This document shows positions 44,858 through 46,669 of a stretch of DNA of 64,000 nucleotides, piece by piece. Source of the DNA: Ramazzottius varieornatus (Eukaryota > Animalia > Tardigrada); NCBI GenBank assembly GCA_001949185.1, contig BDGG01000008.1, forward strand, positions 1,364,001-1,428,000, written 5' to 3'. A model generated the notes under the pieces. It was not told where the DNA came from, did no database searches, and was given only the letters and a program-made list of their open reading frames with translations. How positions within the stretch are numbered: the first letter of the stretch is position 1; every line of letters starts with the position of its first letter. Position numbers and translations under genes: made by a program.

Positions 44858-46669
44858 TCATAAAACCAAGGCTCCGAAATTATACAAGAACAAAGCCGTG
44901 CACCCCACAGCCACCGCTACCAACGCGGCCACAGTCGGGGTAGTCTCGTAACTCCCAACCATAAACATCTCTTGAGGCTCCTCACTAGCCTCTTTCTCCG
45001 TTTCCGAACCCACTTCCGACTCTGGATCGGTCCCGGAGAACCCTTCATCCTCCACCGACGATTCATCCACGCTCAACTCACTCTCCAAGTTCAAAGACTC
45101 CTCTACTCCACCATCCACGCTTTCACTACTCAGAACTTCCGCTTTGATCTCCTGTCCATACCTCAAGAAGAAGTAAATCCTCGCACATGCTTCCACATCC
45201 GCATCTGCTCGATGCATCACCCCACTCGGCGGTTCCCCGAAACATTCTTCGTATAACACAGCCAGTTTGGTGTTCCGACCACTCGGCATAGTTTGAGCTC
45301 CCAACGTCATTGTACAGTCCGTAGGGATCTCTTCGAACATATCAGCCAAAGCCGTTTGCTTCGCTCTGTGCATCTCAGCTAAGATTACTCTGACATCGAA
45401 CTGAATGTTATGTCCAACTACCACGGAAGTATCGTCTAACGAAGTCTTGAAAATACTGAAAATATCCTGGATGGGTCGCCCTTCAAGGAGAGCCTTCTCG
45501 CGGGTTATACCATGGACCTTGACGGCGCCTGGGGGAATTTCGTAGGTGAAGTCGGGCTTGACGAGAAAGGCGTACTTGGAGAGGGTCTGGCCACAGGGAC
45601 AGTACATGTGCCAGGCTAGCTCGACCATCCGACACTTGTCCCAGGAGTCGAGGTCGTGTGGAGACGCTTTGGGTGGAAAACCCGTGGTTTCGGTGTCGAG
45701 GACCATAACGGAAGCGCCTTTGGACAGAACACAGTTACAGGAAGCCGATCTGGGCAGTGGCAGACTTGCAGAAGCTTCGTCGTTGGACACGTTTTCCTTC
45801 GTAATTCCGGTTTGATGAGTAGTGGCACCACCTACAAGAAAAACATTCGGTATTTGTACACGCGCCTGGCCTAAAAGTNNNNNNNNNNNNNNNNNNNNNN
45901 NNNNNNNNNNNNNNNNNNNNNNNNNNNNATTTAGGCCAGGCACGTGTACAGGAAATTACCATAGAAAAATTCGAATGTCGTAAAATCGCGTAACCGATGT
46001 AAATTAGTAAGATTCGATGCTTGTTAAAGGTATGAAAAATAATTTCAAATTTAGTGAGCTCGCTAGTTCACTCTACTCACTTGTTTTGGATAGGCCAGGA
46101 ATGGCCAGTCGGTAAAGCGACTTCTTGGTCGTCGCAGGCGTCCGTTTCTTTTCCACCACGGTAGCATTATTCGCTGCTGACCGATCTGGGGAAAATGATT
46201 GAGCCGTTTGTTCATTGGATTTGTAGTAGATGGCTTGAACATCTGGCACAACCTTCTCCAGGAGATTCGTTCCAATTTCCCTGACACGAGCCTCGTCATC
46301 AGCAGGTCCACAGAAGAACGCCATGACGTGCTCGTTCTTGCCCGAGCTCCGTTCTGACGGCATGGCCGTGCTGACTATGACGGACGATATCCTGTCCAAG
46401 TCACCACTGAAGTACAGCTGCTTAACTTGAGCCCATTTTGCATCAATCTGATCTCGCGGAAAGAACATGAGCCATTTTCCATTAGCGTCATCGTATTCAT
46501 ATGGCGCAGCAGAAGCTTCTAACCACATATGCTCGGCGTGAGTGGATGGATCCACGTTGAGATTCGTACAGAAACTGGTGCCTATCGAGCTTCGGGAAAC
46601 GTTCGGGTCTTCGTTCTCATCTTTCTGAGGCTCAGGAGCGTCGTTTAAAGTATCTTTGGATGCATCCAT
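44858..46669 (-). CDS. Predicted 520 aa fusion: DUF1917/Bles03-like domain + DEDDh exonuclease (copy 2) + acidic linker + C-terminal TM; exons 46669-46081 and 45831-44858
   Basis: Exon 1: GKWLMFF..IDAKW..VST..VMAFFCG..IYYKSNEQT. The phase-1 donor ACAA|GTGAGT matches the phase-1 acceptor TTTTTCTTGTAG|GT. Exon 2: LDTETTG, GHNIQFD, HRADADV and tail TVAALVAVAVGCTALFLYNFGALVL. Confidence 0.78.
45859..45946. mobile_element. TA-flanked TIR element spanning the assembly gap (N at 45879-45928), inside an intron
   Basis: CACGCGCCTGGCCTAAA on the left and TTTAGGCCAGGCACGTG on the right are inverted repeats with TA outside each. True length unknown. Confidence 0.75.

What the first reader, a model, noticed from the sequence alone, without database searches (positions are those of the whole stretch)
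44858..46669. Hidden fusion gene: DUF1917/Bles03-like domain + intact DEDDh exonuclease + membrane tail anchor
Seen: the ORF track shows two separate ORFs. However, the upstream ORF ends at a perfect donor (ACAA|GTGAGT, 46081/46080) whose phase matches a strong acceptor at 45832/45831. Splicing gives ...GLSKT-S-GATTHQ... and one 520 aa protein. All DEDDh residues are present (DTE, FD, H-x4-D), followed by an Asp/Glu/Ser-rich linker and a terminal hydrophobic helix. Known: DUF1917/C11orf68 (Bles03) has an eIF4E-like fold of unknown function, and mammalian TREX1 is a DEDDh nuclease anchored to the ER by a C-terminal TM that clears cytosolic DNA. Inference: a membrane-tethered nuclease with a putative nucleic-acid-end recognition domain, convergent on TREX1, possibly clearing damage-derived or viral nucleic acid. 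I do not recognise this architecture from any described protein.
Basis: partly seen in the sequence, partly recalled or inferred. Interest (0 to 1): 0.88.

Follow-up and report, generated by a model that had tools for sequence, protein, structure and literature searches.

The report
Tardigrade tail-anchored exonuclease, giant-virus derived
The two open reading frames are one real, already annotated but unstudied tardigrade gene, in which an exonuclease of giant-virus type is joined to a host domain with the fold of the mRNA cap-binding protein and to a membrane anchor.

Summary
Exon 1 (46669..46081, minus strand) and exon 2 (45831..44858) join in phase across a 249-base GT..AG intron. The N gap lies wholly inside that intron, at the centre of a small foldback transposon (MITE) whose two inverted ends flank it.

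The gene is not hidden. The public Ramazzottius varieornatus protein RvY_13201-2 (714 aa) contains exon 1, then Ser, then exon 2 exactly. Hypsibius exemplaris BV898_12917 and a Paramacrobiotus protein share the architecture. All three are unnamed and I found no paper on them.

- **N domain:** a confident eIF4E/BLES03 fold (Z 12-13). It scores only at Pfam's threshold, which is why databases miss it.
- **Exonuclease:** an intact DEDDh enzyme of the DnaQ/ExoX type. It is not TREX1 kin.
- **C-terminus:** the terminal transmembrane helix is conserved in five tardigrade sequences.

New here: the exonuclease sits inside a clade otherwise made of giant-virus contigs and unnamed metagenome proteins. 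In those contigs the gene lies between a decapping Nudix and an NPH-I-like helicase, near XRN and the capping enzyme. This points to RNA rather than DNA substrates.

The function is inferred only.

The parts
46081..46669 (-). Exon 1 of the coding core. It runs from ATG at 46669 and ends in phase 1 (ACA A|GT). It encodes 196 aa plus one base.
   Evidence: It is identical to residues 195-390 of the public protein P0223.
46100..46552 (-). eIF4E/BLES03-fold domain, about residues 40-190. The Pfam Bles03 match covers residues 63-152 (46214-46483). The terminal strand YRLA lies just before the exon end.
   Evidence: Pfam 24.4 bits. AF2 pLDDT 83.9. Foldseek gives eIF4E at E 1e-5 and 1ztp at rank 4. 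VIA gives Z 12-13 for eIF4E and 11.9 for BLES03.
45832..46080 (-). Intron, GTGAGT...TTCTTGTAG, 249 nt as assembled. It has in-frame stops straight after the donor.
   Evidence: The same junction is used in P0223.
45855..45950 (.). Foldback MITE inside the intron. Its 21-nt inverted ends are at 45855-45875 and 45930-45950. The assembly gap 45879-45928 is its centre.
   Evidence: 130 genomic copies of the end sequence against 0 for the control. A full 153-nt copy is at L262:1501-1653.
44858..45831 (-). Exon 2: linker, exonuclease, acidic linker, TM helix and stop (44858-44860).
   Evidence: It is identical to residues 392-714 of P0223.
45173..45703 (-). DEDDh (RNase_T/DnaQ-like) exonuclease domain. 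Catalytic codons are D 45695-45697, E 45689-45691, D 45395-45397, H 45212-45214 and D 45197-45199.
   Evidence: Pfam 63.6 bits. Conserved columns. AF2 pLDDT 96.5. Fold matches to DnaQ, ExoX and epsilon.
44942..45154 (-). Asp/Glu/Ser-rich linker of about 70 aa. It is presumably disordered.
   Evidence: 33% D+E and 21% S+T. It is not conserved in sequence among the orthologues.
44861..44935 (-). C-terminal hydrophobic helix (tail anchor). It ends at the last residue.
   Evidence: Kyte-Doolittle 19-mer mean 2.07. A hydrophobic C-terminus is present in all five tardigrade sequences despite sequence divergence. No hydrophobic N-terminus exists (maximum 0.76).
44705..44710 (-). AATAAA, a likely polyadenylation signal about 150 nt after the stop. 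There is none in the intron.
   Evidence: Read from the sequence.
40629..41992 (-). Tandem paralogue of the exonuclease (44% identity), with no N domain. Spliceosomal introns split VIDT|ETSG and precede the H-x4-D exon.
   Evidence: It falls within the tardigrade clade.

Best explanation
Shown: this is one tardigrade nuclear gene, publicly annotated as RvY_13201-2. Its coding core is two exons and encodes a chimeric, tail-anchored 3'-5' exonuclease.
- The N-terminal domain has the eIF4E/BLES03 fold and comes from a family with several other copies in tardigrades and other animals.
- The catalytic domain is an intact DEDDh exonuclease of the DnaQ/ExoX type.
- That catalytic domain belongs to a clade otherwise populated by giant-virus (Nucleocytoviricota) contigs and unnamed metagenome proteins.
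- The architecture is shared by Ramazzottius, Hypsibius and Paramacrobiotus, so the fusion predates their split.

Inferred: an ancestor of these tardigrades captured the viral exonuclease gene and duplicated it. One copy was joined, through an intron, to a host eIF4E-fold domain and gained an acidic linker and a C-terminal membrane helix. The protein is inserted post-translationally into an organelle membrane (ER or mitochondrial outer membrane), with both domains facing the cytosol. There it removes nucleotides from free 3' ends by two-metal catalysis.

In the viral relatives the gene lies between an mRNA-decapping Nudix and an NPH-I-like helicase, next to XRN and the capping enzyme. I therefore think the preferred substrate is RNA, for example 3' trimming or decay of transcripts at a membrane. 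The N domain would act as a substrate-end or phosphate-ligand recognition module rather than as an enzyme.
For: - **Junction and continuity:**
- **Orthologues with both domains and a TM tail:**
- **Domains and folds:**
- **Catalytic residues:**
- **Host origin of the N domain:** the nearest relatives are Paramacrobiotus proteins and a sea-urchin repeat protein, and a standalone copy lies in this genome.
- **Viral affinity of the exonuclease:** the tardigrade clade has 100/100 support and lies inside a 98/93 clade with IMG/VR giant-virus contigs, including GVMAG entries. Grouping with Bacteroidota is rejected, p-AU 0.0002.
- **Viral nature of the contigs:** the neighbours of P0011 match the ASFV g5R decapping enzyme (E 3e-18) and vaccinia NPH-I (E 5e-16).
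- **Conserved gene block:** XRN, Nudix, exonuclease, NPH-I helicase and capping enzyme occur together in 8 of the 9 nearest viral loci.
- **Nuclear residence:** spliceosomal introns in the paralogue and a MITE in the intron.
Against: - No RNA reads could be examined here.
- No biochemical or localisation data exist.
- DEDDh enzymes of this fold include both DNases and RNases, and the nearest solved structures are mostly DNA enzymes.
- Viral gene order may be conserved by descent rather than by function.
- Many members of the containing clade are unnamed metagenome proteins, so a viral donor is the most economical reading but is not proven.
- Two residues strongly conserved in the N-domain family vary among the fusion orthologues (K98: I/K/L/R; R107: R/R/D/A). 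This weakens any ligand-binding claim.
- The true start codon is uncertain: 520 aa from ATG 46669, or 714 aa as annotated.
Confidence: 0.6

Rival explanations
1. TREX1-like role. An ER-anchored DEDDh DNase degrades cytosolic DNA that arises from damage, desiccation, transposons or viruses.
For: It has the same catalytic class and the same kind of C-terminal membrane anchor. The nearest solved folds are DNA exonucleases such as DnaQ, ExoX, ExoI and epsilon. Tardigrades suffer massive DNA breakage on drying or irradiation (general knowledge).
Against: TREX1 appears neither in the phmmer search of PDB nor among the listed Foldseek matches. The viral relatives lie in an mRNA turnover and transcription block. 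The gene was not found in the held supplementary tables of four tardigrade stress or comparative papers, although those tables are cut.
Confidence: 0.2
2. The chimera is a neutral or decaying lineage-specific gene with no specific role. Alternatively, intron retention mostly yields a standalone 198-aa N-domain protein.
For: Family-conserved residues are relaxed in the N domain. A MITE sits in the intron. A stop follows the donor at once, so an unspliced mRNA would encode the N domain alone.
Against: The reading frames are intact and all five catalytic residues are kept across three genera at 41-57% identity. The TM tail is kept by property rather than by sequence.
Confidence: 0.08
3. The N domain is itself an enzyme, a BLES03-type phosphothreonine lyase as predicted in silico by Khater and Mohanty 2014. 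That would make the protein bifunctional.
For: NCBI names some family members 'putative phosphothreonine lyase domain-containing protein'. PMC4159009 predicts K159, Y175 and K204 of BLES03 as catalytic.
Against: I mapped these residues through the profile alignment to 1ztp and the family alignment. The Lys base corresponds to I98 or M103 here and the Tyr to F119. Only the K204 equivalent (K150) is kept. The prediction itself was never tested experimentally.
Confidence: 0.05
4. These are two separate genes, and the apparent fusion is an annotation artefact repeated in three species.
For: No reads were seen here. The first ATG in the exon 2 frame gives MVLDTETTG, which prokaryote-style gene callers take as a start (P0001, P0003).
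Against: Independent annotations in three genera join the same two parts with a spacer of like length. A start at MVLD would leave only two residues before the catalytic Asp, whereas the viral homologues have 6 to 9. The intron holds no polyadenylation signal.
Confidence: 0.03

Closest known systems
RvY_13201-2 (R. varieornatus), BV898_12917 (H. exemplaris), LOC129600181 (P. metropolitanus): public hypothetical proteins
   Same: This is the same gene (RvY_13201-2 holds exon 1 + S + exon 2 exactly), or orthologues with the same three-part architecture.
   Different: The public records carry only the exonuclease domain annotation. The Bles03 match drops to 21.2 bits, below the cut-off, in the 714-aa model. 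The 194-aa N-terminal extension of the public model is not shared with H. exemplaris.
Standalone ~190-aa DEDDh exonucleases of giant-virus contigs (for example IMG/VR GVMAG-S-1101164-76, and P0011 on a 69.6-kb contig)
   Same: They share 39-47% identity over the whole catalytic domain. They also share the insert between DTETTG and the CRMV(E/Q)IAW strand, and they fall in the same well-supported clade.
   Different: The viral proteins have no N domain, no acidic linker and no TM helix. They lie in a Nudix/XRN/NPH-I/capping block that is absent from the tardigrade genome with these queries.
TREX1 (mammalian ER tail-anchored DEDDh DNase)
   Same: DEDDh chemistry and a C-terminal membrane helix that leaves the nuclease in the cytosol.
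   Different: There is no detectable specific kinship. TREX1 has no eIF4E-fold domain, and its linker is not acidic (my knowledge). Dimerisation was not tested here.
PARN / PNLDC1 (cap-interacting deadenylase; membrane-anchored pre-piRNA trimmer)
   Same: The logic is the same: a DEDDh-class 3'-5' exoribonuclease combined with a cap-related module (PARN) or with a C-terminal TM anchor (PNLDC1). This comparison rests on my knowledge.
   Different: They belong to a different family (CAF1, PF04857), which gives no match here. The tardigrade genome has its own CAF1-family loci. Cap binding by the N domain is unproven.
BLES03/C11orf68 (PDB 1ztp) and eIF4E
   Same: The fold is the same: VIA Z 11.9 for 1ztp and 12-13 for eIF4E over residues 25-188. 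Weak profile matches go to both.
   Different: Sequence similarity is marginal (E 0.04 to 0.7). There is no IF4E Pfam match. The BLES03 residues proposed as catalytic are not kept. I could not map the cap-stacking tryptophans of eIF4E.

Membership tests
DEDDh / DnaQ-like exonuclease superfamily (Pfam RNase_T PF00929) | Exo I motif D-x-E, Exo II Asp, Exo III H-x4-D | tested here: met
   D45-T-E47, F-D145 and H206-RADA-D211 of the exon 2 product. These columns are invariant or nearly so in 18 and 44 sequences.
DEDDh / DnaQ-like exonuclease superfamily (Pfam RNase_T PF00929) | Profile score above the curated cut-off, and an RNase H-like exonuclease fold | tested here: met
   63.6 bits against a cut-off of 24. 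AF2 pLDDT 96.5. Foldseek E 4e-11 to DnaQ, ExoX and Pol III epsilon, TM 0.7-0.8.
DEDDh / DnaQ-like exonuclease superfamily (Pfam RNase_T PF00929) | 3'-5' exonuclease activity | not testable with these tools
   This needs an enzyme assay.
TREX1/TREX2 family | Specific sequence or structural kinship to TREX1 | tested here: not met
   phmmer against PDB finds only PolC-exo and DnaQ. No TREX entry is among the listed Foldseek matches.
TREX1/TREX2 family | C-terminal TM helix anchoring to the ER | tested here: inconclusive
   A terminal hydrophobic helix is present and conserved. The target membrane is unknown.
TREX1/TREX2 family | Obligate homodimer with a polyproline helix | not tested
   I ran no complex prediction.
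Bles03 / DUF1917 (PF08939) | Profile score above the gathering cut-off | tested here: inconclusive
   24.4 bits against 23.1 for exon 1 alone, covering only profile positions 163-249 of 255. It scores 21.2, below the cut-off, in the 714-aa public protein. Relatives score up to 79 bits.
Bles03 / DUF1917 (PF08939) | eIF4E-like alpha/beta fold | tested here: met
   1ztp at Foldseek rank 4 with E 3e-5. VIA Z 11.9, rmsd 5.4 over 154 residues.
Bles03 / DUF1917 (PF08939) | Proposed lyase residues K159, Y175 and K204 (PMC4159009) | tested here: not met
   The equivalents are I98 or M103, F119 and K150. The Lys position reads I/K/L/R in the four fusion proteins.
eIF4E (PF01652) | Profile match and the cap-stacking Trp pair | tested here: not met
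   There is no IF4E Pfam match for this protein, only fold similarity. I could not map the Trp pair without coordinates.
Tail-anchored membrane proteins | A single TM helix at the extreme C-terminus and no N-terminal signal sequence | tested here: met
   The hydrophobic stretch fills the last 25 residues. The N-terminal half has no hydrophobic stretch.
Giant-virus DEDDh exonuclease clade | Phylogenetic placement inside the clade | tested here: met
   98/93 support for the clade of 26 rows, and 100/100 for the tardigrades within it. The AU test rejects union with Bacteroidota, p 0.0002, but I named that group after seeing the tree.

The most novel reading that the evidence does not exclude
A giant-virus exoribonuclease was domesticated early in eutardigrade evolution. 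It was wired to a cap-binding-fold domain and a membrane anchor, and it now acts as a tardigrade-specific, membrane-localised RNA surveillance or trimming enzyme. In this reading the N domain reads an RNA end (a cap or a phosphorylated end) and the DEDDh domain degrades from the 3' end. That would be a convergent counterpart of PARN/PNLDC1, built from viral and host parts, possibly used against viruses or transposons or during recovery from desiccation.
Probability: 0.2. Interest if true: 0.75.

Novelty: new variant of a known kind. Interest (0 to 1): 0.55.

Why it matters
Tardigrade genomes have been argued over for horizontally acquired genes, and few well-supported cases come from viruses rather than bacteria. 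This gene shows several signs of a clean virus-to-animal capture followed by domain fusion:
- the catalytic domain nests among giant-virus sequences;
- it carries spliceosomal introns and a host transposon;
- it has been duplicated;
- it has been fused to a host domain and a membrane anchor;
- the result is kept in three genera.

The gene also gives the poorly understood BLES03/DUF1917 family a concrete functional partner, a nuclease. That makes its long-suspected nucleic-acid role testable. The conserved viral block of XRN, decapping Nudix, DEDDh exonuclease and NPH-I also suggests a so far undescribed 3'-5' arm of giant-virus mRNA turnover. The gene can be studied directly, because knock-out methods exist for R. 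varieornatus (PMC11175437).

Tried and rejected
- **RNA evidence.** So I obtained no RNA reads and no orthologous gene structures.
- **Joined model.** I never sent the joined spliced model to any tool. The exons were searched apart by reference. The joined evidence comes from natural public proteins that the tools returned (P0002, P0004, P0223).
- **Literature.** I found nothing for tardigrade + Bles03, BV898_12917 or RvY_13201. Neither gene id is in the supplementary tables held for PMC9145152, PMC5531438 or PMC11233135, and none are held for PMC11413396. Those files are cut, so this is weak evidence.
- **Bacterial origin of the exonuclease.** The nearest named bacteria (Flavobacteriales) are only 35-40% identical to the viral group. 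They form a separate clade, and union with the tardigrades is rejected.
- **Apparent nuclease fusions of the N domain.** The apparent fusions to HaeIII restriction enzyme, DUF4417 and ZinT all come from one repetitive ZinT protein, P0207. They are spurious.
- **Remnants of the viral block in the tardigrade genome.** The NPH-I query found nothing. The Nudix query gave only a weak hit, which I take to be the host's own Nudix.
- **Absence of PARN/PNLDC1-type genes as a reason for the fusion.** Rejected, because several CAF1-family loci exist.
- **Complex prediction.** Not run, because no binding claim depends on it.
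Full report
**Observation**

On the minus strand, an ORF ends just after a GTGAGT donor at 46081/46080. A second ORF in the matching phase follows a TTCTTGTAG acceptor at 45832/45831. Exon 1 from the ATG at 46669 is 589 nt and exon 2 to the stop at 44858 is 974 nt. 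Together they give 520 codons plus a stop, and the junction reads K-T-S-G-A-T-T-H-Q. Stop codons follow the donor immediately, so only splicing can join the two parts. An AATAAA lies about 150 nt after the stop and there is none in the intron.

**The gap**

The 50 Ns (45879-45928) are entirely intronic. The sequence on either side is an inverted repeat. That 21-nt sequence occurs 130 times in this genome against 0 for the reversed control, often as facing pairs 100-150 nt apart. A complete 153-nt copy is at L262:1501-1653. So the gap is the unassembled centre of a hairpin-forming MITE that sits in the intron, and its two ends show that the flanks belong together.

Independent evidence says no exon is missing. 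Exon 1 aligns to residues 65-183 of H. exemplaris BV898_12917 (50% identity) and exon 2 to residues 237-446 (57%). That leaves 53 residues between the blocks there and 58 here.

**The gene is already annotated**

The genome has 55.8 Mb in 200 contigs, and a search with the H. exemplaris protein returned RvY_13201-2 of Ramazzottius varieornatus, 714 aa. Its residues 195-390 are exon 1, residue 391 is Ser, and residues 392-714 are exon 2, all exact.

Its extra 194 N-terminal residues map to 46652-47011 and to exons near 51.6-52.0 kb. They have no counterpart in H. exemplaris, so the true start is open. P. metropolitanus LOC129600181 isoform X2 also has both domains and the tail.

I found no paper that mentions any of these genes. 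I did not send the joined model to any tool. The exons were searched apart by reference.

**The N domain**

Pfam gives Bles03 at 24.4 bits against a cut-off of 23.1, covering only the last third of the model. In the 714-aa public protein the score drops to 21.2, which explains why databases list only the exonuclease.

An exhaustive search found 379 cluster representatives of a family with the signature GKW..F / W / KVST / YCG / YK.D.QT, often in tandem repeats. An AlphaFold model built on 64 of them has pLDDT 83.9.
- Foldseek's best matches are eIF4E (E 1e-5), with human BLES03 1ztp at rank 4.
- VIA-align gives Z 12-13 for eIF4E (for example 2wmc_E, rmsd 2.8 over 124 residues) and Z 11.9 for 1ztp, covering residues 25-188.
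- The last strand (YRLA, residues 186-189) sits just before the exon end, so the exon boundary is the domain boundary.

The nearest relatives are Paramacrobiotus proteins and a sea-urchin triple repeat, and this genome has a standalone copy. The domain is therefore of host stock.

An in-silico paper proposed that BLES03 is a phosphothreonine lyase with K159, Y175 and K204 as catalytic residues (PMC4159009). Mapped through the profile alignment, the first two are I98 or M103 and F119 here, and they vary among the fusion orthologues. I therefore do not favour an enzymatic role.

Other partners seen in the family are a NACHT NTPase, ankyrin repeats, and the small ExoX-like_C and DUF5710 motifs. 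Apparent restriction-enzyme fusions came from one spurious repetitive protein. Among the hits I examined, only the tardigrade proteins carry a DEDDh domain.

**The exonuclease**

RNase_T scores 63.6 bits. D45, E47, D145, H206 and D211 are conserved in all relatives. The model has pLDDT 96.5. It resembles the S. thermophilus DnaQ domain, PolC-exo, ExoX, Pol III epsilon, ExoI, RNase T and DinG-exo at E 1e-9 to 4e-11. TREX1 appears in neither search.

The only named eukaryotic homologues found were from tardigrades. The next best hits are standalone proteins of about 190 aa at 43-47% identity. One of them, P0011, lies on a 69.6-kb IMG/VR contig. There it is flanked by a Nudix enzyme most like the ASFV g5R decapping enzyme (E 3e-18) and by a helicase most like vaccinia NPH-I (E 5e-16).

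A careful ML tree of 66 sequences gives three results:
- The six tardigrade sequences, including the tandem paralogue, form one clade (100/100).
- That clade sits inside a 98/93 clade with eight IMG/VR contigs (two of them named GVMAG) and twelve unnamed metagenome proteins.
- Bacteroidota form a separate clade.

Forcing tardigrades together with Bacteroidota costs 51.6 log-likelihood units, p-AU 0.0002. I chose that group after seeing the tree.

In 8 of the 9 nearest viral loci the order is XRN (opposite strand), Nudix, exonuclease, and then, in seven of them, the NPH-I-like helicase, followed by the capping enzyme where the locus reaches that far. The tardigrade genome holds no close copy of that Nudix or helicase.

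The paralogue at 40.6-42.0 kb has spliceosomal introns, one of which splits the D-T|E motif. Broken pogo/Tc5 transposase pieces lie between the two copies. The exonuclease is therefore a resident nuclear gene and not contamination.

**The tail**

After the catalytic domain comes a linker of about 70 residues that is 33% Asp/Glu. The last 25 residues form a hydrophobic helix. All five tardigrade sequences end in such a helix although the residues differ. There is no N-terminal signal sequence. This is the signature of a tail-anchored protein with its bulk in the cytosol. The target membrane cannot be told from the sequence.

**Mechanism**

Shown:
- the architecture, its conservation, the intact catalytic residues and the fold of both domains;
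- the viral affinity of the catalytic domain and the gene context of its viral relatives.

Inferred:
- The protein is a membrane-tethered 3'-5' exonuclease acting in the cytosol.
- RNA 3' ends are the more likely substrate. The viral relatives sit among decapping, 5'-3' decay, transcript-release and capping genes, and the fused host domain has the fold of the cap-binding protein.
- The N domain recognises a substrate feature rather than catalysing a reaction.

The TREX1-like DNA-clearing role remains a fair rival, because the closest solved folds are DNA enzymes.

**Verdict**

What is new is the identification of the N domain, the giant-virus affinity of the exonuclease with its mRNA-turnover context, and the explanation of the gap. 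I rate it a new variant of a known kind (a membrane-anchored DEDDh exonuclease) and of moderate interest.

Noticed in passing
window 45855-45950; L262:1501-1653: This is a foldback MITE family with 21-nt inverted ends, TGTACACG(Y)GCCTGGCCTAAA. The ends occur 130 times in the genome and full copies are about 100-170 nt. One copy sits in this gene's intron and caused the assembly gap.
   Followed up: partly
window 43193-44513 (+): Broken pogo/Tc5-type transposase pieces (HTH_Tnp_Tc5 at 43209-43523, DDE_1 at 44031-44513) lie between the two exonuclease paralogues.
   Followed up: partly
window 40284-41992 (-): This is a tandem paralogue of the exonuclease with no N domain. Its DTE motif is split by an intron and its H-x4-D motif is intact. 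In the tree it pairs with the H. exemplaris fusion protein (97/84) rather than with its neighbour. That may be a long-branch effect or may mean the duplication is old. Its C-terminal part, noted by another reader as RIC-8-like, was not examined.
   Followed up: partly
L181-L186, L188, L201 (IMG/VR contigs): These loci share a conserved giant-virus gene block: XRN-like 5'-3' exonuclease, g5R/D10-like decapping Nudix and DEDDh exonuclease in all eight, an NPH-I-like helicase in seven, and in some a capping enzyme. This suggests a viral 3'-5' RNA decay activity alongside decapping and XRN.
   Followed up: partly
window 46652-47011 and 51604-51994 (-): The public model RvY_13201-2 adds 194 N-terminal residues from these upstream pieces. 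They have no Pfam match and no counterpart in H. exemplaris. They may be 5' UTR or a merged upstream gene.
   Followed up: partly
P0148, P0073, P0074 (relatives of the N domain): The same eIF4E-fold domain occurs at the C-terminus of a 1170-aa NACHT NTPase, as three tandem copies in a sea-urchin protein, and as two copies in a Paramacrobiotus protein.
   Followed up: no
L005:1456-1965 (G000 contig 10): This is a standalone, single-ORF paralogue of the N domain in the same genome (169 aa, 33% identity). It has no Pfam match on its own.
   Followed up: partly
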